A stretch of DNA of 64,000 nucleotides from Anolis carolinensis (lineage: Eukaryota). Below, one piece after another: positions 7,953 through 61,910 of the stretch (its first letter is position 1; each line of letters opens with the position of its first letter). The translations under genes were made by a program, and so were the position numbers. The notes below the pieces were generated by a model. The model was not told the origin of the DNA. It saw only the letters and a program-made list of their open reading frames with translations, and made no database searches. The stretch spans positions 141,435,036 to 141,499,035 of the forward strand of contig NC_085842.1 in assembly GCF_035594765.1 (NCBI RefSeq), written 5' to 3'.

Positions 7953-10326
7953 ATGAGGAGGCTTATGGACCCGGATGGATTCCTGATGTCTCTTGGGGAT
8001 TTTCCTGCCATACTTGTTGACGGTCCTGTTGGTGTCCTGATAGATCTCTATAACACGGAGGTCTCTAGGGCAATAGACACGATCGCCCCTGAGCATCCCC
8101 TCTTGTCGCATTGGTCCAAACCAGCCCCCTGGTTTACTGGGGAGCTGGCGGTGAGGCGGGGGCTAGAGAGCCGTTGTACAAGGCGGGGGCTAGAGAGCCA
8201 TTGGCAGAGGACTCGAAGTGTATCCGACTGAACACGGGCTAAAGCCTCTCTTAAGGCATACTCCGTGGCAATGCCCGCAGCCAGAAAGACTTTCTCGACT
8301 GCGCGCATTGCGTCTGCAACTAATAGACCAAGAGAGTTGTTTCAGGTGGTCAGGGTGCTCCTCTATCCCCCTGAGGGGGAGGGGCCTTCTGATCACCTGA
8401 CAACCCGATGTGGCCAGTTCGCACATCATTTTGCAGATGAAGTCGCTTGATTTCGCTCCAGCTTGGACGCTGACATTAGTGCAGAACCAGGGGATGTAAC
8501 CGAGGCACCTGTCTGTCAGAATTTATTGGATTCGTTCCAACTTGTTCAGCCTGATGACGTTGACAAGGTTCTTGGAGCGGTGAGGGCAACCACTTGTATC
8601 CTTGATCCTTGCCCATCTTGGCTTATCGAACTTGCCGATGGGAGGCTGGCTGATTGGTTTACTAGTATCATTAATGCCTCTTTACAGCAAGGGCATGTTC
8701 CATCTTGCCTTAAAAAGGCAATTGTAAGGCTCATATTAAAGAAGGTGACTTTAGATTCATTATTATTGAACAACTACTGGCCAATCTCTAACCTCCCATT
8801 TTTGGGCAAGGTCCTGGAGAGAGTGGTTGTTTCTCAGCTCCAGGAATTCTTGGATGAGACCGATTATCTGGATTTGTCACAGTCTGGCTTCAGGCCTGGT
8901 CATGGGACTGAAATGGCTTGGTGGATGACCTCCGCAGAGAACTAGATAGGGGGAGTGCATCTCTTCTGGTTCTCCTGGACATCTCAGCGGCGTTCGATAC
9001 CATCGACCATGGTATCATTCTGGGGCGGCTCTCGGGAATGGGTCTTGGGGGCATTGCTTTGCAGTGGCTCCGCTCCTTCCTGGAGGGTCGTTCCCAGATG
9101 GTGAAGCTGGGGGACACCTGCTCGGACCCCTGGCCTTTGACCTGTGGGGTCCCACAAGGTTCCATTCTCTCCCCCATGCTTTTCAACATCTACATGAAAC
9201 CGCTGGGAGAGGTCATCCGGGGTTTTGGAGTTCGGTGCCATCTTTACGCAGATGACACACAACTCTACTACTCTTTTCCACCAAACTCCAAGGAAGCCGC
9301 TCAGACCCTAAACCGGTGCCTGGCAGCTGTGTCGAACTGGATGAGGGCTAACAAGTTGAAGCTTAATCCAGACAAGGCAGAGGCCCTCCTGGTCAGTCGT
9401 GGGACCAATAGGGGTATTGGGTGGCAACCTGTGCTTGACGGGGTTGCACTCCCCCTGAAGGCGCAGGTCTGCAGTCTGGGGGTCCCCCTGGATTCATCTC
9501 TGGCGCTTGATGCCCAGGTGGGCCTTTGCACATTTAAAACTTGTGCGCCAGCTGCGACCATACCTTGAGAAGTCTGACTTGGCCATGGTGGTCCATTCCT
9601 TAGTTACATCCAGACTGGATTACTGCAATGCTCTCTACGTGGGGCTGCCCCTGAAGACGGCCCGGAAACTCCAACTGGTTCAAAGAGTGGCAGCCAGATT
9701 TCTAACTGGAGCCGGCTATAGGGAGCACACAATGCCCCTATTAAAGCAGCTCCACTGGCTGCCGATAAACTGCCGGGCCCAATTCAAGGTGCAGGTTTTG
9801 ACCTATAAAGCCCTACACGGCTCGGGCCCTACCTATCTCCATGATCGCATCTCCCCCTGTGAGCCAGTGCGGACCTTGAGATCATCCGGGGAGGCTCTTC
9901 CACGCTCCCACCACCATCTCAAGTGCGACTGGTGGGGACGAGGAAACGAGCCTTCTCAGCAGTGGCCCCCCGGCTCTGGAATGCATTGCCAAAAGAGATC
10001 AGGCAATCCCCTACATTATCCAATTTCCGTAAGGAACTAAAGACCTGGTGGTGTCGGCAGGTTTTTCAGTAATTGCATTAGAATACCGCCGATTTCTGGG
10101 CCTGAATATATTGCACAAGATTTCTCTAACTTAAAATGATACATTTTAATATATTGGGTTTATGGTTCCTGTCCCCTTGATCAGGTCATGTAAATGTTAT
10201 TTATTTCTATAATTGTATTTTTACTTTTCTTAATATGTTATGTTTGTTATGTAATGTTTGTGTTGTTTTTATGATTGGAAACCGCCCTGAGTCCCATCCG
10301 GGAGATAGGGCGGTATATAAATAAAG

Positions 10327-51007: not shown

Positions 51008-52864
51008 TCCCTGTACTTTGAGATCAGCTACTAAAAATCTATTTGAATTTTTTTGCTCCTTTATACACAAGGCTTGAGATGAAGGAAGTCCATATAAGGG
51101 TACTTTCAGTAAAAGGAATGCCAATTGTTAGTGTATTTTCAGGAGCATCTGTATTTTTAGTCACACCAAGCTTGATTCTACTCAGAAGGAACACATATTT
51201 GTTTTAGGCTTGCACTTTGTACTCCAACTTAGTGTGAAAAAACTTTCCTCTGTTTCTTGCTGGGTCTGCACTGGCCATTGAAGCAACCTTATTATTATAG
51301 CTGAAGTCTACTATGCCAGGGGAATGTTTGCACACAATGTCTCCCTTATTTCTCTTCCCATTTCTCTAATCAATGATAGAAACGGTTTAGTTTTCACAGC
51401 TTATCTGACACTACAGTGTCTACACAGAGATTAAACTCCTCTTTCCACATTTTCACGCCAGTTTTGAATTTGAAGCTTGCAGGTTCAATATGTCAAATGG
51501 ATCCAAGCCTTCTATTCTCTCTCTCACACTCACTCAACCCCCCCCCCCCTCTCATTCTCCCTTATCCCTACAAAGACAAGTTTCTTATTCTTCTACCACC
51601 ATGACTCGGCTTTGTGGGAGTGCATCTTACATTCTCTTAAGTGTTTTATAAGGCCTTTTCAGGTGGAAGCAGGGATGTAGAAATGGGTGGGGAAATGTCC
51701 TGATTAGGAACTGTCCTGGTTTAATACACAGTTTTAGTTAGCGTAACCCTCTCTTATCTTACTTTTCAGCATTTTAAAAAATATTCTATTTGCCTTCTCC
51801 CCATCTCATTTTTCCTCTTATTTCATTTGCTTCAAACCGTGCTAAAAGGTTTGAAGCAAAAGTAGTTCAGCTTAGTAAGAGTGAAAGGAGAAGACAGAGC
51901 AGAATCTTGCCCTTCCCTGTAGGCTATGACAGTCTCTTCTTTCCTATCTTTAGGAAACCATATTGTTGTTTTGTCACATGAGTCCCAGTTCTCATTTATG
52001 AAATGTTGTATAGTTTGTTTCTGGTGTGTTTTCATTAGGTTTCTTGGATGACAACACCTTAGTTGAAATAAGATGTTGGTTTTAAAATGTGCTTGCTGTT
52101 ACTAACATTTAAAATTTGTGTGTTGCTTGCCAAATGTTTAGTCTTTCCTTTAGCGTTGCATCTTGACCTTTTGCATGACAATAAGAATCATTCATGAATA
52201 CTCAAAAGACAATGAAAGATGTCTAAATATATCCTTGGGGCATATAATTAACTGACTTTCAGTAGAATTCCCCTTGCAGAATTGTGGGATCAGGACATTA
52301 AGTTGGGAGGCTGCTTTGAAACCCAGACCTTTCTGGCAAATTCTTCTCCTAACACCCTACAGTGCTTGACAACTTGACATTGAAGAAAACACTATCTGCT
52401 ACTGTAACTGTCTGATGCTGGCCGGCACTTGGTAAAGACACTGTGGACTGAACAGAAAGAATATGTTCCCTCCCTTTCTATCTTTTATTATGCATATATA
52501 GTATTAATGTACTGCATAATAAAATGTTGCAGCCTGTGCCAGACATGGCCAGAAGATAATCTGTGACAATAGAAAGAGATATTTGGATTTTTTTAAAACA
52601 AATTAAAAAAACCCCTACAGAAACAAAAACTGGAACTTCAAGGCAAAATAAGTTTTTCTCAGCCTGGCTGTTGAAGATTCCTTTAACTGGACAGTACCTA
52701 TCAGCCTGTGTATACAATGCACATGGTACATAATAACCTATGCTCCACCTCAGCATCCCACATTTATGCCTCACCAGAGAAGCTCAAAGATGGAATCTAC
52801 AGGGGTTTTTTTCTACAGCAGATATCTTCTTCCACTGATATTTTTCACATGACCTGGGGGTGTG

Positions 52865-53580
52865 TGTTCCGTCCCCCAGGACGATGGTTTGCCTTACCTA
52901 TTGGTCGTTTGTTTGTTTTCCCTCCTTTGCATTCTGTTTCAGCCTCTGGCTGCAAAAGCCTAGGAAAAGTGACTTGGAATCTGCAAGAGCTGGCTGCAGT
53001 TTTCTTTGCAGTGATTGGTCAAAGAATGCAACATCTTAGGACCGCCCTTTTTACCAGGGTCTAGTCTCCATTTTGGAGCTTCATTCTGGCTATAGTCTTA
53101 CAACGTGCTGGAGCTGTGCAAGGCTAACTGGGACAAATCATCCTCAAAACCAGGCCAATCTAAGCCTATCCAAATTAGATAAGTATTGAATTATATTGAT
53201 CTGGAATAGGAACTCTAGTTAGAGGAGCAGGGTTATTCTGTCGCTTCTAGAACTAATCTTTGCTGTAAAGATAGGGAAGGAAAGAGTTTCTCCTTCTAAT
53301 ATAGGCAGCGTGATTAGGGTATAGTGGTTTTATAATCACCTTTGCTTTCTGGAACCAGGGATAATTCTGTACCTAAAACCTATAGAAATTTGTTTCATTT
53401 TCTGCAACTTTAAGATCTGTGCCAGGTTTACAACCTTGTATGAATAAACATCCTTTTTTGAAGTTATCCAGACTCAGTCGTTCAATATCTATAGGACAGC
53501 TTATAGGGATTTGCAGTTCGCCCGGATAAAGGACAGCACGTTTCAGTTTTATAGTTTTTTATTGTCCGGCGGACGGCACA
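52865..53580 (+). repeat. 5' LTR
   Basis: TGTTCCGTCC...GGACGGCACA with inverted termini; contains AATAAA (~53443); identical by eye to 58830-59545. Confidence 0.97.
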
Positions 53581-54007
53581 GTTTTGAGGTAGATCAGCGG
53601 TTTTTCCGCTTGAGCTAGCTTGCACGGCTTATAGTTTTTTATAGTTTAGGAAGTTTAGTTTAGGCCGCGGCTTTTCCGCCTGAGCTCAGTCTGCATACCT
53701 AAAGACTCAACCAGCGTCTGAGGCAGTGGAGCCCGCTCTCAGACCTGAAGGAGTCAAATAGTGGGGCTCTATTTCCTTGCTATTTGGCTCGCGTGTGCGC
53801 ACGTGGCCCAGTGGCTTTCTGGGTTTGCACAGGCTGTGCAGTTCCCAGCAACGTCCAGGGCTCCCTCGGCGGTAGACCTCGAGCCGCGGAGCACCAGCGA
53901 CAGTTCTTTGGCTGGCTCTGAGGCGTGAAGCCCACCAGAACCAGGCTAGAACCTGGACAGGCCTGGCAACGCTGCTGCGAGTTCGGCCGGAGCACTCGGC
54001 CGGCTTC

Positions 54008-54402
54008 GACCTGCCTCATGGTCCGGCGGTGGTGACCTGCCTCATCGTCCTGCGGTGGTGACCTGCCTCATGGTCCGGCGGTGGTGACCTGCCTCATCGT
54101 CCTGCGGTGGTGACCTGCCTCATCGTCCTGCGGTGGTGACCTGCCTCATCGTCCTGCGGTGGTGACCTGCTTCATCGTCCTGCGGTGGTGACCTGCCTCA
54201 TTGTCCGGCGGTGGTGACCTGCCTCATCGTCCTGCGGTGGTGACCTGCTTCATTGACCTGCGGCGGTGACCTGTCTCATCATCCTGCGGTGGTGACCTGC
54301 CTCATCGTCCTGCGGTGGTGACCTGCTTCATCGTCCTGCGGTGGTGACCTGCCTCATCGTCCTGCGGTGGTGACCTGTTTCATCGACCTGCGGTGGTGAC
54401 CT
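54008..54402 (+). repeat. 26-bp minisatellite, 15 copies, in the BEL leader
   Basis: Unit gacctgcctcatcgtcctgcggtggt, with starts every 26 nt from 54008 to 54398. Confidence 0.95.
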
Positions 54403-54782
54403 CCCTTCACAGCGGGGAGGAGGCGTCTTTTCTCTCCTCCTTTCCAAAGCCAGCCTCGGTGCTCCTTCGGCGGCAGGCCTCGAGCCGCAGAGCGCGAGGT
54501 GCTTGAAAATTTGGCGAAGTCGCCATTTTGGCAGTTTACGTCACTCGGGCAAGGGAGGTATCAAGTGGCAAGTTGCTGTCAGTTGGCATTTTGCAGCTTG
54601 CCCACTAAAATCTGGCGCCAAAGGTCACTATCTTTGTAAAGTATAGTTACTTAGTGATATATATTGCTATGGTTAAGTGTTGTGCATTGTATTATATATT
54701 GCATTTGCTTTTATTGTAAATTTACTTGCTGGTATGTTGTATTTGCTTTTGTTGTAAATTTACTTGCTATTAAGAATACATA

Positions 54783-57700
54783 ATGTCTATGCAATTTCAA
54801 GATGATACAGATGGTATACCTCCTTCTGAGGCTGAAAGTAGGAATGAAAGGCCCCAAAGGATAAAGCACCCTTCAGCCAAGATGCTAGCCCATCTAATAG
54901 ATGAAAAGGAGCTCCTCCATGTGAGGTTAGGTTCGGCATGGGAGCGAATTGTAACATTGATGGGCAGAATTGAGAGCTTGGGTATTACAAGGGTGCCATC
55001 CATATTACAGACCGACCTTGAAGAGACCTTCGGTCTCTGGAGGGGTTTGGTGTCTAAGATAGTCCAGGTCCTCGAGCGCATTAACGCCAAGGATTCAGAG
55101 TTAGAAATAGTGAGTGTCTTAGCTGACACTAATGAGAAAGAAAATAAGGTGAGGGCAATTCTAGATGCCTTGGAATTTAGTTCTCCACCTGTTAATCTAA
55201 GGTCTGAGCCAAAAGGAAATCAGTCTTCCTTATGCAGCCATGAGACCAATCTTTTAAAATCACCTGCTGTGGCACTTAGTCTTAAGTCCAACCGCTCTAG
55301 CCAGGTATCTAAGCTAAGGGAGTGTGCATCATCTAAACATAGCCACTCTAGCAAGTCTTCTGCTGCTGGGAGTGCCATCTCTTCCCTAGCTGCCTTGCAC
55401 ATTAGGGAGGCTGCACGTCTGGAGCTAAAGAGCAAGGTAGCAGGGGCGGAAGCTGATGCTAAGGCAGCTGATCTCACCCTTCCCTTTAAAGAAGAAGAGC
55501 AACGAATGCAAATAGAACAGGCCCGTAGACAAAGCGAAATGCAAATGGAACAGGCCCAAAGGCAAGGTGAAATAGAAATGCTTAGAATAAGGATGGACGC
55601 TACTGCCAAAAAGGTAAGGGCTGAGACTTTGGCCAAGGCCCTAATTGAGCCACTCACAGAAGAAAATGTAAGTCAGTTGCCGAAGCAGGACCCTTCTTCC
55701 AAGGTGCTTGTGCATCTTAATAGCTTAAACAGCCAGTTTTCGGATGAGGAACAGGAAGACTTCTCTCCTTACCCAGAGCAGGGCCCCAAAGTCACTTTTG
55801 AGTTTCCTGCAGAGCAGAGCGTCATAGCGGGGAGCTCACCCTTGCCCGAGCTACCTGTGCCTCCTGCTAAATCCCTAGGTCAGTCAATCAGGGCCTCAAG
55901 GCCAAGTGCTAGTTGGCCCTTACAGACAGCTGCACAGGGAGCCACCGATTCGTCAGTGGTCGATGTCATCCCTCCAAGAGGCCAAAGGTTGACGCAAGGT
56001 GCACGGTGGGAGTCCACTCCACAACAGCAAACTCCTCAATTGTTCCCTTCGACGCCAGAGTCCCAGCTTGTCTCCATCATCAGAAGCCCCAGAAGAGATC
56101 TTAAGGACAAGGGTGTCGAAAAGTTTTCGGACAAGCCTGAGGAATTTCTTCTCTGGAAGGCCACCTTCCAGAGAGCAATCAGAGACTTAAAGTTATTGCC
56201 TGAGGAAGAACTGACTCTTCTGGCTGCATGGTTGGGCCCAGCCTCATCCTCACAAGTTAAGAAGATCTACGCAGCCCACGTAGCCGATCCCGACAAAGCC
56301 CTGGAAAAGGCCTGGGCCAGGTTGCAGCAGAGGTATGGGGCCAGCACAGAGATTGAAGCATCTCTTATGGACAAGCTCCAAAGGTTCCCAGCTTTGAAAC
56401 TCAAAGACTTCAAACTCTTGTGGGACCTCAGCGATCTCCTTACGGAATTAGAGTCGGCCAAGGAGAATCCAGAACTGCCCGGTTTGAAGTGCCTCGATCA
56501 GCACCTGTCCCAGAGGCAGATCTTGACCAAGCTGCCCTTCACTTTGCAAGAACGCTGGGGACAGGAGGTCTTCAACTACAAGGAGGCCCACTCCCAGGCA
56601 TACCCTCCATTTTCTCATTTGGTCCAGTTCATCACCAGGGCGGCCAGAGAAAGGAATGATCCGCAGACGGGCCTCCCCACCTTATACCAAGGGACCCAGC
56701 CAGAGAAGGCACCTAAAGTGGACAAGAAACCATCTAGAGAGGCCAATAGACCTGTCAGCGTAAAGGCAGTCGAAACTCAACTCAAGACTGACGAACCCAG
56801 GTCGGAGGTAAAAGAGTTGCTTTGCCCTATTCACCAAAAGCCTCACAGCTTGGCCAACTGCAGGGAGTTTAGTAGAAAGACATACAAAGAAAGGCAACAG
56901 CTAGTTCAAAAGCAGGGAATCTGCTTTAGATGCTGTGGAGCAACTCCACACTTTGCATCCAACTGCAAAGAAAACATCAAGTGTGAGAAATGCAACAGCC
57001 TCAAGCATTGCACCGCAATGCACAACTCCAATATCATCTCCCACCCCAAAGAGAACGCTTCACCAAAAGAAAAGTCAGCAGTCGAAGACACCGACAAGCC
57101 AGCCGCACCAGAGATGCAGGTGGAAGTTTCAGCAGTCGCCTGTACAGAGCTGTGTTCTGACTCGCACCAGTACAGAGTTTGTCATCCTATCTGCCTAGCG
57201 GATGTATATCCAGCCAAGAGCCCTTGGCTTAGAAAGAGACTCTATGTGGCCCTGGATTCACAGAGCGACGCCTCCCTGGCTACTCCAGAGTTCTTCCGCA
57301 TGTTTGACCTTAAAACCAAGATGGTCGACTACACTATGACTACGTGTGCAGGAAAAAAGAAGTTGCAGGGTCGCATAGCATCTGGCTTCGTTGTCTCCTC
57401 TTGCGACCAGAAGAGACAGTTCAAGTTGCCAGACCTGATTGAGTGTTCCTCTATTCCCCGGAACAAAAGGCAGATTGTCACTAGAGAAGTTGTGGAGGCT
57501 CATCCACATTTGCGACGGTTAAAGAATGCTATACCAGCCTTTCGGCCAGATGTGGACATTGCCCTTTTGCTTGGCTCGGACTGCCCGAGCTTGTTCTGTG
57601 TGAACGACCAAGTTAAAGGACCTCCAGGTGCACCTATCGCACAACAATTGCCATTAGGCTGGACAGTCATAGGCCCAGTGTGCATAAACAAGATGCACCC

Positions 57701-58637
57701 ACCATCGTCGTTGGACTCCAATCAAGCACAGGTGCTTAAAGGTGGACGTCCTACACTTGTGCGCAGTTGCCTAAGTCACATCTCAGTCTACTGCCAAGGA
57801 ATAACTCCAGAGTATTCCTCCACCTTCAAAGTCTCTGAGAGAGACGAAGCCATAGCGCTCTTGAAAGATGAGCAAAGGTTCTTGGACAGTATGAATGCTC
57901 AAGTCTCACGAAGTACAGAGGGAAATTGGGTAGCTCCTTTGCCCTTTAAGTCAGATAAGCCCACTTCGCCAAACAATAGACACATGGCAGGGAAAAGACT
58001 CTGGTCCCTAAAGAAAAGAATCCATCATCAGGGTAGAACTCTAACTGAGGCAGCCCTTAGAAACGAAGGTCTGTGGGTAGTTAATGCCAAAAGGTTGGTC
58101 AACAGTTGTATTTTCAAATGTGTTAAATGCAGGTGCCTTAGGCGAAACTGTCAAAATCGGTTAATAGCAGAACTACCTCAGGATAGGACTTTGACAGACC
58201 CACCCTTTTCCCACGTGGGAATTAATGTGTTTGGTCCTTGGGAAATTGTTACCAGAAAAACCAGGGGTGGTGTTGTAAATAATAAAAGATGGGCGGTTTT
58301 GTTTACTTGTTTGTCAAAACGAACTGTCTATATTGAGGATGTAGAGGGAATGGACACTTCATCATTTTTAAATGCATTGAAAAGGTTCATAGCCCTCAGA
58401 GGGCCAATTAAGTCAATTCGATCGGACTGTGGCACCAATTTTGCATGTGCAGACCTTAGCCAACCACTTCTGGAAGAGGTGGAAGGCCGAATACTTAAGC
58501 CAGCTTTCAACCAGAAGACTCTGGCAAACCCCAGAGGACAATTTCAAGGTGGGAAACCTTGTGTTGCTAAAGGACAAAGACTTGCCCCGCTATGCCTGGC
58601 CTATGGGCATTACACTAAAGACCTTTCCTTGCCCTGA
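54783..58637 (+). CDS. BEL/Pao Gag-protease polyprotein fused to a defective integrase remnant (1284 aa)
   Basis: Coiled-coil N-terminus; capsid-like region EKFSDKPEEFLLWKATF; knuckles CPIHQKPHSLANC, CFRCCGATPHFASNC and CEKCNSLKHCTAMH; protease YVALDSQSDAS...IALLLGSD...PLGW; then HHQG...CVKC and SDCGTNF. No YVDD-type RT motif. Confidence 0.93.
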   Translation: MSMQFQDDTDGIPPSEAESRNERPQRIKHPSAKMLAHLIDEKELLHVRLGSAWERIVTLMGRIESLGITRVPSILQTDLEETFGLWRGLVSKIVQVLERINAKDSELEIVSVLADTNEKENKVRAILDALEFSSPPVNLRSEPKGNQSSLCSHETNLLKSPAVALSLKSNRSSQVSKLRECASSKHSHSSKSSAAGSAISSLAALHIREAARLELKSKVAGAEADAKAADLTLPFKEEEQRMQIEQARRQSEMQMEQAQRQGEIEMLRIRMDATAKKVRAETLAKALIEPLTEENVSQLPKQDPSSKVLVHLNSLNSQFSDEEQEDFSPYPEQGPKVTFEFPAEQSVIAGSSPLPELPVPPAKSLGQSIRASRPSASWPLQTAAQGATDSSVVDVIPPRGQRLTQGARWESTPQQQTPQLFPSTPESQLVSIIRSPRRDLKDKGVEKFSDKPEEFLLWKATFQRAIRDLKLLPEEELTLLAAWLGPASSSQVKKIYAAHVADPDKALEKAWARLQQRYGASTEIEASLMDKLQRFPALKLKDFKLLWDLSDLLTELESAKENPELPGLKCLDQHLSQRQILTKLPFTLQERWGQEVFNYKEAHSQAYPPFSHLVQFITRAARERNDPQTGLPTLYQGTQPEKAPKVDKKPSREANRPVSVKAVETQLKTDEPRSEVKELLCPIHQKPHSLANCREFSRKTYKERQQLVQKQGICFRCCGATPHFASNCKENIKCEKCNSLKHCTAMHNSNIISHPKENASPKEKSAVEDTDKPAAPEMQVEVSAVACTELCSDSHQYRVCHPICLADVYPAKSPWLRKRLYVALDSQSDASLATPEFFRMFDLKTKMVDYTMTTCAGKKKLQGRIASGFVVSSCDQKRQFKLPDLIECSSIPRNKRQIVTREVVEAHPHLRRLKNAIPAFRPDVDIALLLGSDCPSLFCVNDQVKGPPGAPIAQQLPLGWTVIGPVCINKMHPPSSLDSNQAQVLKGGRPTLVRSCLSHISVYCQGITPEYSSTFKVSERDEAIALLKDEQRFLDSMNAQVSRSTEGNWVAPLPFKSDKPTSPNNRHMAGKRLWSLKKRIHHQGRTLTEAALRNEGLWVVNAKRLVNSCIFKCVKCRCLRRNCQNRLIAELPQDRTLTDPPFSHVGINVFGPWEIVTRKTRGGVVNNKRWAVLFTCLSKRTVYIEDVEGMDTSSFLNALKRFIALRGPIKSIRSDCGTNFACADLSQPLLEEVEGRILKPAFNQKTLANPRGQFQGGKPCVAKGQRLAPLCLAYGHYTKDLSLP

Positions 58638-58740
58638 CGGTAAGGTTAGAAAAGTTCAAGTAAAGACTCATAGTAAGGACAAAATGTCTGTCCTGGACAG
58701 ACCAATTAGTGACCTCGTGTTGCTTATTGGAGATGTTTAA
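58443..58740 (+). pseudogene. Out-of-frame C-terminal domain of the BEL integrase (DUF5641-like)
   Basis: VQTLANHFWKRWKAEYL...VGNLVLLKD...WPMG...DGKVRKVQVKT...RPISDLVLL, in a different frame from the main ORF. Confidence 0.85.
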
Positions 58741-58819
58741 AGTTTTATACTGTTGTATTGTTGTGTATACAAAGGTGTTTGTATGTTTTTGATTGGTAAA
58801 TTCCCACATCCTGGGAATT

Positions 58820-58829
58820 TAGCGGGGAG
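58820..58829 (+). promoter_or_regulatory. Polypurine tract
   Basis: agcggggag directly abuts the TG of the 3' LTR. Confidence 0.8.
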
Positions 58830-59545
58830 TGTTCCGTCCCCCAGGACGATGGTTTGCCTTACCTATTGGTCGTTTGTTTGTTTTCCCTCCTTTGCATTCT
58901 GTTTCAGCCTCTGGCTGCAAAAGCCTAGGAAAAGTGACTTGGAATCTGCAAGAGCTGGCTGCAGTTTTCTTTGCAGTGATTGGTCAAAGAATGCAACATC
59001 TTAGGACCGCCCTTTTTACCAGGGTCTAGTCTCCATTTTGGAGCTTCATTCTGGCTATAGTCTTACAACGTGCTGGAGCTGTGCAAGGCTAACTGGGACA
59101 AATCATCCTCAAAACCAGGCCAATCTAAGCCTATCCAAATTAGATAAGTATTGAATTATATTGATCTGGAATAGGAACTCTAGTTAGAGGAGCAGGGTTA
59201 TTCTGTCGCTTCTAGAACTAATCTTTGCTGTAAAGATAGGGAAGGAAAGAGTTTCTCCTTCTAATATAGGCAGCGTGATTAGGGTATAGTGGTTTTATAA
59301 TCACCTTTGCTTTCTGGAACCAGGGATAATTCTGTACCTAAAACCTATAGAAATTTGTTTCATTTTCTGCAACTTTAAGATCTGTGCCAGGTTTACAACC
59401 TTGTATGAATAAACATCCTTTTTTGAAGTTATCCAGACTCAGTCGTTCAATATCTATAGGACAGCTTATAGGGATTTGCAGTTCGCCCGGATAAAGGACA
59501 GCACGTTTCAGTTTTATAGTTTTTTATTGTCCGGCGGACGGCACA
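58830..59545 (+). repeat. 3' LTR
   Basis: 716 bp, same sequence as the 5' LTR, followed by the TSD gtgtg. Confidence 0.97.
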
Positions 59546-61910
59546 GTGTGAGCAAAACATGTACTTTGTGAGTCCCAGTCCATGGCACCTTTAGGCAAGG
59601 CAGAATCCTGCATGAATACATCTCCAGCATCTTAGGCAAAAAATCTTTCTTAATCTGACTACTGAAGATCCTTTCACTGCAGAGTACCTATCAGCGTCTA
59701 TCTCTGCCATGAGCTCCACCCCATCATTTTCTTCAACCACACCCCTGTTTTCCATACAATCCTTTTCCTTATCCCAAGTCTTCTTCTTTAGATAGTAGGC
59801 TTTCTTTCTTTTAGGCAGCAGAACAGTCGACAACCACTTCAGATATAAAATTTCAGCAGATTGACTGTGTGAGAGAGACAACTACAGTATCAAGGGAAGG
59901 GGAGGGCAATCCTCCAGATTAATTATGGCACTGCGAATGTGAAAAATAAATTCCCCCAAAAGAGACATTTTTCAGGAGATCCGGTGATGGACATACTCTT
60001 GAGGTTGAGTTAGAGCTTCCTAGTACCTCATTTAATTAACTCAATCTGACTTTTATAGGGCTTTATGTTATGTGTTTCCTTGTTCAGTAAACAAACAGCA
60101 GAAAATTAAAACAGGGCAGCTGCCAGCGAACAGTAAATTTAATTGAAAAATAATGAATTGCCATGGGGTGCCACCAGGGGTTTTGTCAAGATAAAGTTAT
60201 TTATCCTGGAAAGCTTCCACACGCATTTGTCAGTACTTGATATATACAGAAGTAAAAGGAGAGAAGCAAGCTGTGAGACATGCCGGGGCTGGATGCTGAT
60301 GGCATAGCCTTCTAAGCTCTGCTACTGAACAGCTTCCATTTATTTCCATGGCTCTGGGACTAAGCAACAGTTCTTTGAGAGTATTGCTGAAAGTTGTGCA
60401 ACTAGGCAGCAGTGCTTCCTGGATGGCTCCCTAACTCTCAGTCCTCTGTAAGAGCTGTGCAAGGCAAAGGCAGCCACAGCTAAGCTCTAAAGTGCAAGTT
60501 CATGCCGCTCCAGTAGGGTGGGACTAGGAATGGGACATGTTCCTTTCAGTCACTTTTGGACTGCATTCAACTAATCTTGCAAATGTCTCAACCTGTATTT
60601 CAATTGTGTTGGGAATACCATCACCCATTCCTGACAATGATTGAAAAGGAGGCAAGAAAACATGAGGCATGATAATACATTTATCTTTTCTCCAAACAAA
60701 TCAAAATGCAGCTTCAAGGGGCAGCAGCAGTGTTCACTCTCTCTGTGTCTGGAGAGAAGGCACATGGGCAACATTCAGCTGTAATTCTGCAGCTGAGAAA
60801 AGAGAGCTGGCATCACCTGCTTGGATCTCTAGGAATTTCTTGCAGGAGGTCCCTAGATATGGGGACCCTGGCTTTTTCTGGCCCTTGGAGTGCATGCTCC
60901 AGCCTTCTGGATGAGGTGGGAATGTCCTCAAATGTCTTCAAAAGGGCAAACTATATATAACTTCAGGTTATATGAGTGTATCTCACCAATAAAATTACTG
61001 TTCATGATAGCTTATTGGACTGTGATTGACTGAGGTTGCTAAAGAAACTAATGCACAGTGAATTCTGATGTCAATTTGAGCTGGACTAATGCACAGAGTG
61101 CAATTTCATTATTCATTGGCTTTTGTACTTCCTGAATGTTTAAAAACACACATTTTGGGAGAAAACACATCTTTAAAAATAATACAGCTTTAAAAATAAT
61201 TTGTGCACTTTTAATGCTACCTGAAGAGAAAATTTGAAATAGGGTGGAATGGATTGATATGTAAAACACACATAGAAGTGACCAAGATGAGAAATAGACT
61301 CATTCACTTATGCTCTTAAAATGGGGTGATCATTTCAGTCTCCAGATGCCTTGGGTTATCAACTCCACAGTGCTGCAGATCACATATGAGAGTTGTGGTG
61401 CCAAAGATTAGGAGGCTCAGAAGTTTTTCCCTCATGGCTTAAGAACGGCAACTGTGTACCAAAAACCACACCTGTGGGTGCCATAGTGTCGTTGCTGTGT
61501 CTGCATGAATTGGGCCTTATATTTCCCTTTGTAACTTGCTTTTGCTTGTTGGCTACAAAGTCTTTCCAGCTATGCGCTTAAAGCAAAAATTCCTAAGTAT
61601 TTTGCAGAATAAGCAAGACTTTCACTATAGAAACTTGAATATTTCCACTGTGGTACTGGCAGGGATTTTGTGCCTGTTTTCCATTTTGCTTTTATATTTA
61701 GCATTTTATAAAATGATATACACTTCTCCTTTAATTGGAGATGAGGTATCTGCTACTTAATTCAATCACTTGTTAATATGATCAACACTACTTGGGATTT
61801 TATTCCTCCTTCTGTCTTTCTCTTCCTCTTTATCTTATAAAAAGAGCAGCCAGGAACTCTGTAAGATATGAGTTTATCTCATTAATGATTTCTGCATGCA
61901 CTTAACAGGA

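What the first reader, a model, noticed from the sequence alone, without database searches (positions are those of the whole stretch)
53137..53594. No tRNA primer-binding site; post-LTR bases pair with a site inside the LTR (candidate self-priming BEL)
Seen: the internal region starts GTTTTGAGGTAGAT (53581-53594) and has no TGG to pair with a tRNA CCA end. Its first 9 nt are the exact reverse complement of CCTCAAAAC at 53142-53150 in the LTR. The pairing extends to 12/14 against ATCATCCTCAAAAC (53137-53150) and begins precisely at the first base after the LTR. The chance of a given 9-mer in 716 bp is about 0.3% at uniform base composition. Known: fission yeast Tf1 primes reverse transcription with the first 11 nt of its own transcript annealed to the PBS. 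Inference: if transcription starts near 53137-53142, this BEL lineage may use a tRNA-independent self-priming mechanism, which I know only from Ty3/gypsy-group elements.
Basis: partly seen in the sequence, partly recalled or inferred. Interest (0 to 1): 0.8.

Follow-up and report, generated by a model that had tools for sequence, protein, structure and literature searches.

The report
Self-primed BEL/Pao retrotransposon, anole lizard
A very young BEL/Pao retrotransposon of the green anole has no tRNA primer site; instead the nine bases right after its 5' LTR pair with a spot inside the LTR, and related elements keep that pairing with different sequences, so this branch of BEL/Pao probably starts reverse transcription with a piece of its own RNA.

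Summary
The element is 52865-59545, with two identical 716-bp LTRs and a 5-bp target duplication. The first 9 bases after the 5' LTR (53581-53589) are the exact reverse complement of 53142-53150. No TGG follows the LTR. A flush match this long arises at 0.9% of other start positions in the element, not 0.3%.

The reading is supported by comparison.
- Four young copies of this family keep the 9-bp duplex. Bases 10-11 differ in every copy, so the "12/14" extension is not conserved.
- Two other anole families and many fish, frog, mollusc and metagenome relatives show the same flush pairing with different sequences. Fisher p is 1.4e-13 over 17 families. Own primer site against own LTR beats shuffled assignment at p<=1e-5.
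- Outside anole, the LTR site follows an initiator-like YAG and lies upstream of AATAAA, where a transcript would start.
- An insect BEL element has a normal TGG-type site.

The best explanation is Tf1-like self-priming (about 0.7). This is a new variant of a known mechanism. It is published for Ty3/gypsy and predicted for some Ty1/copia, while BEL/Pao is described as tRNA-primed. The scan had already noted the same thing on other DNA of this genome (s1-528321).

The parts
52860..52864 (+). 5' copy of the 5-bp target-site duplication (GTGTG)
   Evidence: The same 5 bases lie at 59546-59550.
52865..53580 (+). 5' LTR, 716 bp, TG..CA ends
   Evidence: Direct repeat with 58830-59545, 100% identical.
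53138..53143 (+). Initiator-like TCATCC. The candidate transcription start is A at 53140. This is inferred, not shown.
   Evidence: It resembles the TCAKTY initiator described for LTRs (PMC3601003). In related families an A of a YA or YAG motif sits 1-2 nt 5' of the complementary run in 16 of 17.
53142..53150 (+). Candidate self-primer inside the LTR (CCTCAAAAC), followed by C at 53151
   Evidence: Exact reverse complement of 53581-53589. Invariant in all 8 LTRs of four copies.
53443..53448 (+). AATAAA polyadenylation signal of the LTR, the only one
   Evidence: Motif scan. It lies downstream of the candidate primer, as needed if the primer marks the start of R.
53581..53589 (+). Primer-binding site (GTTTTGAGG), starting at the first base after the LTR
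   Evidence: Flush 9-nt complement, empirical p 0.009. Invariant in four copies. The helix forms in the predicted fold with mean pair probability 0.98.
53590..53591 (+). Variable dinucleotide at the inner edge of the duplex (TA here; AT, AC and TC in L001, L011 and L092)
   Evidence: 53591 is the only three-allele column among 1041 aligned columns of four copies. Caveat: in two copies it is the C of a CpG.
53597..53609 (+). Small GC stem with a T5 loop just after the primer site
   Evidence: Read from the sequence and present in the predicted fold. Function not tested.
53904..54484 (+). 26-bp tandem array in the leader
   Evidence: Repeat family D1.
54783..58637 (+). Single ORF of 1284 aa: Gag (DUF1759), zinc knuckles, the protease region and the N-terminal part of integrase. 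RT and RNase H are missing.
   Evidence: Pfam. It aligns to residues 187-846 and 1509-1673 of the 1898-aa fish relative P0011, skipping about 847-1508.
58821..58829 (+). Polypurine tract next to the 3' LTR
   Evidence: The purine run ending in GGGGAG before the TGT of the LTR is conserved in all relatives.
58830..59545 (+). 3' LTR, with the second copy of the candidate primer at 59107-59115
59546..59550 (+). 3' copy of the target-site duplication

Best explanation
The element is a very young, non-autonomous BEL/Pao retrotransposon of Anolis carolinensis. It most likely starts minus-strand DNA synthesis without a tRNA. A short stretch of its own RNA, encoded at 53142-53150 near the start of R, folds back and pairs with the nine bases that directly follow U5 (53581-53589). 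A cut after the C at 53150 would then leave a 3'-OH that reverse transcriptase extends into U5. RNase H makes this cut in fission-yeast Tf1, which is my assumption here. The enzymes must come from an autonomous relative, because this copy has lost RT and RNase H. What is shown: the flush complementarity, its conservation within the family, its covariation across families, and its position upstream of the polyadenylation signal. What is inferred: that the transcript starts at or just before the site (my guess is A 53140), that the RNA is cleaved there, and that the 3' end is used as primer.
For: (1) The 9-nt complement is exact, begins at base +1 after the LTR, and no TGG follows. (2) The window, L001, L011 and L092 are four copies of the family, each with identical or nearly identical LTR pairs. 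All keep site and primer-site bases 1-9 unchanged, and L001 pairs over 14 nt. (3) Two other anole families have different sequences that are again flush-complementary: L002 10 nt (p 0.0006-0.002) and L003 11 nt (p<0.0006). (4) More distant relatives show 7-11 nt, each with its own sequence: Pecten, Xenopus, Eleutherodactylus and metagenome contigs L013, L014, L021, L036, L038, L052 and L054. Fisher combined p is 1.4e-13 over 17 families, and 10 of 17 have p<0.05. (5) Pairing each primer site with its own LTR beats random reassignment in all 100,000 permutations. (6) The helix always starts at +1 and stops at the LTR border. (7) Outside anole the site lies 44-190 nt from the LTR end (98-190 in all but Pecten) and always upstream of AATAAA where one is present. 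It sits just 3' of an initiator-like YAG, which is where a transcript should begin (initiator motif per PMC3601003). (8) The insect outgroup L010 has a TGG-type site and no complement (p 0.44). (9) In the predicted fold of 53140-53615 the 9-bp helix closes the structure, with z -4.7. (10) The same kind of sequence evidence is the accepted basis for calling self-priming in Tj1, sushi, Tcn1 and TAR elements (PMC4600332, PMC6317226).
Against: In this copy the duplex is only 9 bp, one short of the 10-bp criterion used by PMC6317226. There is no TATA box at -30. In the anole families the site lies 404-475 nt from the LTR end, which implies an unusually long R of about 330 nt. In four fish and metagenome families the flush run is only 5-6 nt and not significant on its own. 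I could not search host tRNAs or tRNA fragments. The primer-site start GTAAAA or GTGAAA is shared by many families, which could also point to a conserved host RNA. ICTV describes Belpaoviridae as tRNA-primed (PMC8742986).
Confidence: 0.7

Rival explanations
1. A host RNA is the primer, for example a tRNA half, an internal tRNA fragment as in copia, or another small RNA. The match to the LTR would then be a separate long-range RNA stem used for packaging, dimerisation or presenting the primer site.
For: The first 6-7 bases after the LTR are similar in many fish, frog and mollusc families. Retroviruses do have U5-leader stems around the primer site (my own knowledge). Host tRNAs could not be searched: ARAGORN found none in the window or the anole loci.
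Against: There is no TGG. Three anole families in one host carry three unrelated post-LTR sequences, each matched by its own LTR. Own-versus-foreign pairing has permutation p<=1e-5. The duplex covers the primer site itself and begins exactly at +1, which is what a primer does and is not the pattern of the flanking stems known from retroviruses.
Confidence: 0.13
2. Self-priming occurs, but not from the 5' end. The site would lie in U3, upstream of the true start. Priming would then use the copy near the 3' end of the RNA (59107-59115), in cis or from the second RNA of a dimer.
For: The genomic RNA carries the 3' LTR copy whatever the start site is. T-rich, TATA-like stretches sit only 5-15 nt before the site in several relatives, which would place a TATA-driven start downstream of it. 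In anole the site is far (430 nt) from the LTR end.
Against: It needs more steps than the Tf1 scheme and has no precedent that I know of. In most families an initiator-like YAG abuts the site, and the distance to the LTR end is typical of R plus U5.
Confidence: 0.1
3. Chance match in this copy, with an unknown primer.
For: For this copy alone the empirical p is only 0.009. A 14-nt complement to the LTR also exists deep inside the ORF, 56962-56975 against 52999-53012.
Against: The same flush pairing recurs with other sequences in independent families (Fisher p 1.4e-13), and it is kept in all four copies of this family.
Confidence: 0.03

Closest known systems
Tf1/Tf2 (S. pombe), Tj1 (S. japonicus), sushi-ichi and other Tf1/sushi-group Ty3/gypsy elements
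   Same: No tRNA-type primer site. The bases directly after the 5' LTR are complementary to a short stretch (11 nt in Tf1) inside the LTR that is, or is taken to be, the 5' end of the transcript (PMC4600332, PMC5445492, PMC6934838).
   Different: A different superfamily: BEL/Pao proteins (DUF1759 Gag; relatives carry Peptidase_A17 and DUF5641) rather than Ty3/gypsy. The duplex is 9 bp here. The start site, the RNase H cut and the extra U5-IR-like structure shown for Tf1 are untested. This copy has no RT or RNase H of its own.
Plant Ty1/copia TAR lineage (Houba, Osr-1) and the Tcn1 chromoviruses, predicted self-primers
   Same: Called from sequence alone, by a complement in the 5' LTR to the bases 0-5 bp after the LTR (PMC6317226).
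   Different: Their criterion is at least 10 bp. The window copy has 9, while L001, L011, L002, L003 and L038 meet it. The superfamily and the hosts differ.
Canonical BEL/Pao (Belpaoviridae, Semotivirus), e.g. Achilles of the olive fly
   Same: Gag and integrase families, TG..CA LTRs, 5-bp target duplication, and a polypurine tract next to the 3' LTR.
   Different: These are described as primed by a host tRNA: Arg or Gly (PMC8742986), or Tyr for Achilles (PMC4580426). The insect relative L010 has a TGG-type site. The clade studied here has none.
copia-type priming by an internal tRNA fragment
   Same: A primer site without TGG next to the LTR.
   Different: copia matches a host tRNA-iMet fragment (my own knowledge). 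Here the match is to the element's own LTR and covaries with it.

Membership tests
BEL/Pao LTR retrotransposons (Belpaoviridae) | Gag of the DUF1759 type | tested here: inconclusive
   PF03564 matches residues 448-555 at E 7e-5 and 23.3 bits, just under the 25.4-bit cut-off. The same region aligns at 39% identity with fish BEL polyproteins.
BEL/Pao LTR retrotransposons (Belpaoviridae) | Pol with the Pao-type domain (PF05380), RT/RNase H, integrase and DUF5641 | tested here: not met
   This copy skips residues about 847-1508 of P0011 (RT, RNase H, PF05380) and ends inside the integrase core. Its relatives at 30-58% identity carry PF05380, rve and PF18701. It is therefore a deleted derivative of a BEL/Pao element, not an autonomous member.
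BEL/Pao LTR retrotransposons (Belpaoviridae) | LTRs with TG..CA, short target duplication, polypurine tract | tested here: met
BEL/Pao LTR retrotransposons (Belpaoviridae) | 18-nt primer site complementary to the 3' end of a host tRNA (ICTV profile) | tested here: not met
   No TGG within 60 nt of the LTR in this family. None lies next to the LTR in the related vertebrate, mollusc and metagenome families. Host tRNA sequences themselves were not available.
Tf1-type self-primed elements (mechanism) | Bases adjoining the 5' LTR are complementary to a stretch inside the same LTR | tested here: met
   9 nt here and 10-14 nt in sister copies. It covaries across families.
Tf1-type self-primed elements (mechanism) | That stretch is the 5' end of the transcript | not testable with these tools
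No RNA-derived contigs were recognisable among the fetched loci. The only indirect support is an initiator-like motif and a position upstream of AATAAA.
Tf1-type self-primed elements (mechanism) | RNase H cleaves the RNA duplex to free the primer, and a U5-IR-like structure is required | not tested
   This needs biochemistry. The fold only shows that the helix is favoured.
Tf1/sushi clade of Ty3/gypsy (phylogenetic membership) | Ty3/gypsy-type Gag-Pol | tested here: not met
   All relatives are BEL/Pao polyproteins.

The most novel reading that the evidence does not exclude
A whole branch of BEL/Pao elements (lizard, frog, fish, mollusc and unidentified marine hosts) has given up tRNA priming for self-priming. 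That would make BEL/Pao the third LTR-retrotransposon superfamily with this mechanism. In addition, the dinucleotide that differs in every copy at the inner edge of the duplex (53590-53591) may mark where plus-strand strong-stop DNA runs off the 5' end of the RNA primer. If so, genomic copies alone would reveal the primer length and the transcription start.
Probability: 0.55. Interest if true: 0.72.

Novelty: new variant of a known kind. Interest (0 to 1): 0.6.

Why it matters
BEL/Pao is the least studied LTR superfamily, and its official description says replication is primed by host tRNA. If a large vertebrate and invertebrate branch primes itself, three things follow. First, tRNA-based primer-site detectors will mis-score these elements. 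Second, self-priming arose repeatedly or is ancestral, which bears on the proposal that hairpin or self-priming came before tRNA priming (PMC3601003). Third, host defences that act through tRNA-fragment mimicry of primer sites would not touch these elements. It also gives a cheap prediction of the transcription start in hundreds of unannotated LTR families. Finally, non-autonomous copies such as this one need only a helper's enzymes, not a matching tRNA.

Tried and rejected
- RNA-derived contigs among the 80 metagenome loci: I looked for poly(A) tails and for contig 5' ends complementary to a downstream site. None was convincing.
- Host tRNA test: ARAGORN found no tRNA in the window or the anole loci, and only one tRNA-Thr in the Littorina locus. 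My recalled tRNA sequences are not reliable enough to use.
- G:U pairs: allowing them in the scan gave no gain and raised the background.
- Littorina element L008: its 13-nt flush match is part of a 157-nt, 99% inverted repeat that runs from the LTR into the leader. I left it out of the statistics.
- LTR ends of circularly assembled contigs: I guessed them from terminal inverted repeats. This worked for L023, L025 and L038 and failed for L019. L012, L015, L037 and L053 were left out as unclear.
- Primary Tf1 papers (Levin 1995, 1996; Lin and Levin 1997, 1998; Atwood-Moore 2006) are not held, so the Tf1 features come from secondary sources and my own knowledge.
- Literature searches found no report of self-priming in BEL/Pao.
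- I did not determine which named BEL/Pao clade (Sinbad, Suzu and so on) this is.

Full report
**What is there**

The finding lies in an LTR retrotransposon at 52865-59545. Its LTRs (52865-53580 and 58830-59545) are 716 bp, start with TG, end with CA, and are 100% identical. A 5-bp target duplication (GTGTG) flanks them, and a purine run ending in GGGGAG abuts the 3' LTR. The leader holds a 26-bp tandem array at 53904-54484.

A single ORF (54783-58637, 1284 aa) carries a BEL/Pao-type Gag (DUF1759, just under the Pfam cut-off) and the start of an integrase. Against a full-length fish relative (P0011, 1898 aa) it aligns to residues 187-846 and 1509-1673, and it skips the RT/RNase H part. Its closest database proteins are uncharacterised Anolis carolinensis proteins at 84-98% identity. 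The element is therefore a very recent, non-autonomous BEL/Pao derivative of the green anole. An earlier first-reader note on this window (s1-603482) says the same.

**The observation**

The internal region begins at 53581 with GTTTTGAGG, the exact reverse complement of 53142-53150 in the LTR. The 12/14 extension to 53137 is arithmetically right, and no TGG follows the LTR. I used every internal start position of the element as a control. A flush perfect complement of at least 9 nt occurs at 0.9% of them. Taken alone, this copy is suggestive only.

**Within the family**

I fetched three more copies from the anole assembly: L001, L011 and L092. Each has identical or nearly identical LTR pairs, so all are young.
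- The LTR site and its surroundings are identical in all eight LTRs.
- Bases 1-9 after the LTR, and bases 12 onward, are identical in all four copies.
- Bases 10-11 differ in every copy: TA in the window, AT in L001 (which gives a 14-nt perfect match), AC in L011 and TC in L092.
- In a 1041-column alignment of LTR plus leader, 53591 is the only column with three alleles.

The variable dinucleotide sits exactly at the inner edge of the duplex. That is where plus-strand strong-stop DNA would run off the 5' end of a short RNA primer. This is an inference. Part of the variation may simply be CpG decay, because base 11 is a C followed by G in two copies.

**Across families**

Two other anole BEL families, at 56-58% protein identity, have unrelated post-LTR sequences.
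- L002: 9359-9368 pairs with 8874-8883 (10 nt).
- L003: 9171-9181 pairs with 8756-8766 (11 nt).

Both pairings start at the first base after the LTR, with empirical p of 0.002 or less.

More distant relatives, at 30-39% identity:

| Source | Flush run | Empirical p |
|---|---|---|
| Pecten | 9 nt | 0.003 |
| Xenopus, Eleutherodactylus | 7 nt each | about 0.05 |
| Corythoichthys, Gadus | 6 nt each | not significant |

A scan of metagenome contigs added ten families whose 5' LTR end could be fixed, eight of them through direct-repeat or assembly borders.
- L038 has 11 nt (p 0.0005).
- L013, L014 and L021 have 8 nt each.
- L036, L052 and L054 have 7 nt each, every one with its own sequence.
- L022, L023 and L025 have 5-6 nt.

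Combined statistics:
- Fisher's p over 17 families is 1.4e-13, and 10 of the 17 have p<0.05.
- Each primer site paired with its own LTR beats random reassignment in all 100,000 permutations. So the signal is covariation, not only a shared motif.
- The helix is always longest when started at base +1. It stops at the LTR border, where a C in the site usually faces the terminal A of the LTR (13 of 17 families).
- An insect BEL element (L010) has a TGG-type site one base after its LTR and no complement.

**Where the site sits**

Outside anole the site is 44-190 nt from the LTR end (98-190 in all but Pecten). It lies 12-90 nt upstream of the AATAAA, in the families that have one. It comes immediately after a T-rich stretch ending in YAG.
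- The A of that motif lies 1-2 nt before the run in 16 of 17 families.
- CAGT and TAGT resemble the TCAKTY initiator that is common in LTRs (PMC3601003). This is the layout expected if the transcript starts there and its first 8-13 bases are the primer.
- The same motif also looks like a 3' splice site. I note that and cannot exclude it.

In the three anole families the site is further in, 404-475 nt from the LTR end. The context in this family is TCATCC (53138-53143), and the only AATAAA is at 53443-53448. A start at A 53140 would give an 11-base primer candidate and an R of about 330 nt. That is my guess, not a result. Folding 53140-53615 as RNA gives a 9-bp closing helix between the two partners, with mean pair probability 0.98. 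The fold is more stable than shuffles, at z -4.7.

**Mechanism proposed**

Transcription from the 5' LTR starts at or just before 53142. The 5' bases fold back on 53581-53589. A cut after 53150 leaves a 3'-OH, made by the helper element's RNase H if the process works as in Tf1. Reverse transcriptase then extends it into U5. The pairing is shown. The start site, the cut and the use as primer are inferred.

**What is known**

Self-priming was demonstrated for Tf1. It is inferred from sequence for Tf2, Tj1, sushi, Maggy, Skippy, Cft-1 and others of the Ty3/gypsy Tf1/sushi group (PMC4600332, PMC6934838).

For BEL/Pao, the ICTV profile states tRNA priming by tRNA-Arg or tRNA-Gly (PMC8742986), and Achilles uses tRNA-Tyr (PMC4580426). 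The BEL/Pao survey and the Sinbad paper do not discuss primer sites. I found no paper proposing self-priming in BEL/Pao.

Within this scan the same idea was already raised on other anole loci: s1-528321, followed up with the same conclusion, and also s1-535995, s1-607817 and s1-568249. My data were gathered independently and agree.

**Limits**

- No RNA data could be used.
- No host tRNA set was available.
- The hosts of the metagenome contigs are unknown.
- Three LTR ends (L023, L025, L038) rest on terminal-inverted-repeat matching.
- The Littorina element was excluded, because its match belongs to a 157-nt inverted repeat.

**Verdict**

The reading is supported by covariation, but the transcription start is untested. 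This is a new variant of a known mechanism, of moderate to high interest.

Noticed in passing
window 54783-58637: All four fetched copies of this family give ORFs without RT/RNase H or PF05380 hits (window ORF, P0001 and P0004 scanned with Pfam; P0002 judged from precomputed annotation only), yet their LTR pairs are identical. A non-autonomous family seems to be amplifying now, presumably on the enzymes of another anole BEL family such as the one in L002.
   Followed up: partly
window 53904-54484: A 26-bp tandem array of at least 16 units lies in the leader between the primer site and the ORF. Its origin and role are unknown.
   Followed up: no
window 53590-53591: The dinucleotide right after the 9-bp duplex differs in each of four young copies (TA, AT, AC, TC). 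53591 is the only three-allele column in 1041. It may mark the 5' end of the primer, or it may be partly CpG decay.
   Followed up: partly
window 56962-56975 and 52999-53012: A 14-nt perfect complement links the ORF and the U3 part of the LTR. About 0.01 such matches are expected by chance for this element. No meaning is known.
   Followed up: no
L008:9542-9698 and 9716-9872: The Littorina BEL element carries a 157-nt, 99% inverted repeat. One arm is the end of the LTR plus the first 13 bases of the leader, and the other arm lies in the middle of the LTR. It is present in both LTRs. It looks like a fold-back (snap-back) product of reverse transcription that was then propagated.
   Followed up: partly
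L002:8807-8927 versus L002:14676: The 3' LTR of this anole element lacks 122 bp that the 5' LTR has, between short repeats. The missing piece includes the candidate self-primer, so the 3' LTR of this insertion has lost it.
   Followed up: no
L004-L007, L009, L013, L014, L021, L023, L025, L036, L052, L054 (LTRs, 44-190 nt from their 3' ends): The candidate primer is preceded by a pyrimidine-rich stretch ending in YAG and followed by C. The motif fits an initiator but also looks like a 3' splice acceptor.
   Followed up: partly
window, whole: The window holds 153 N. I did not locate them and did not touch them.
   Followed up: no
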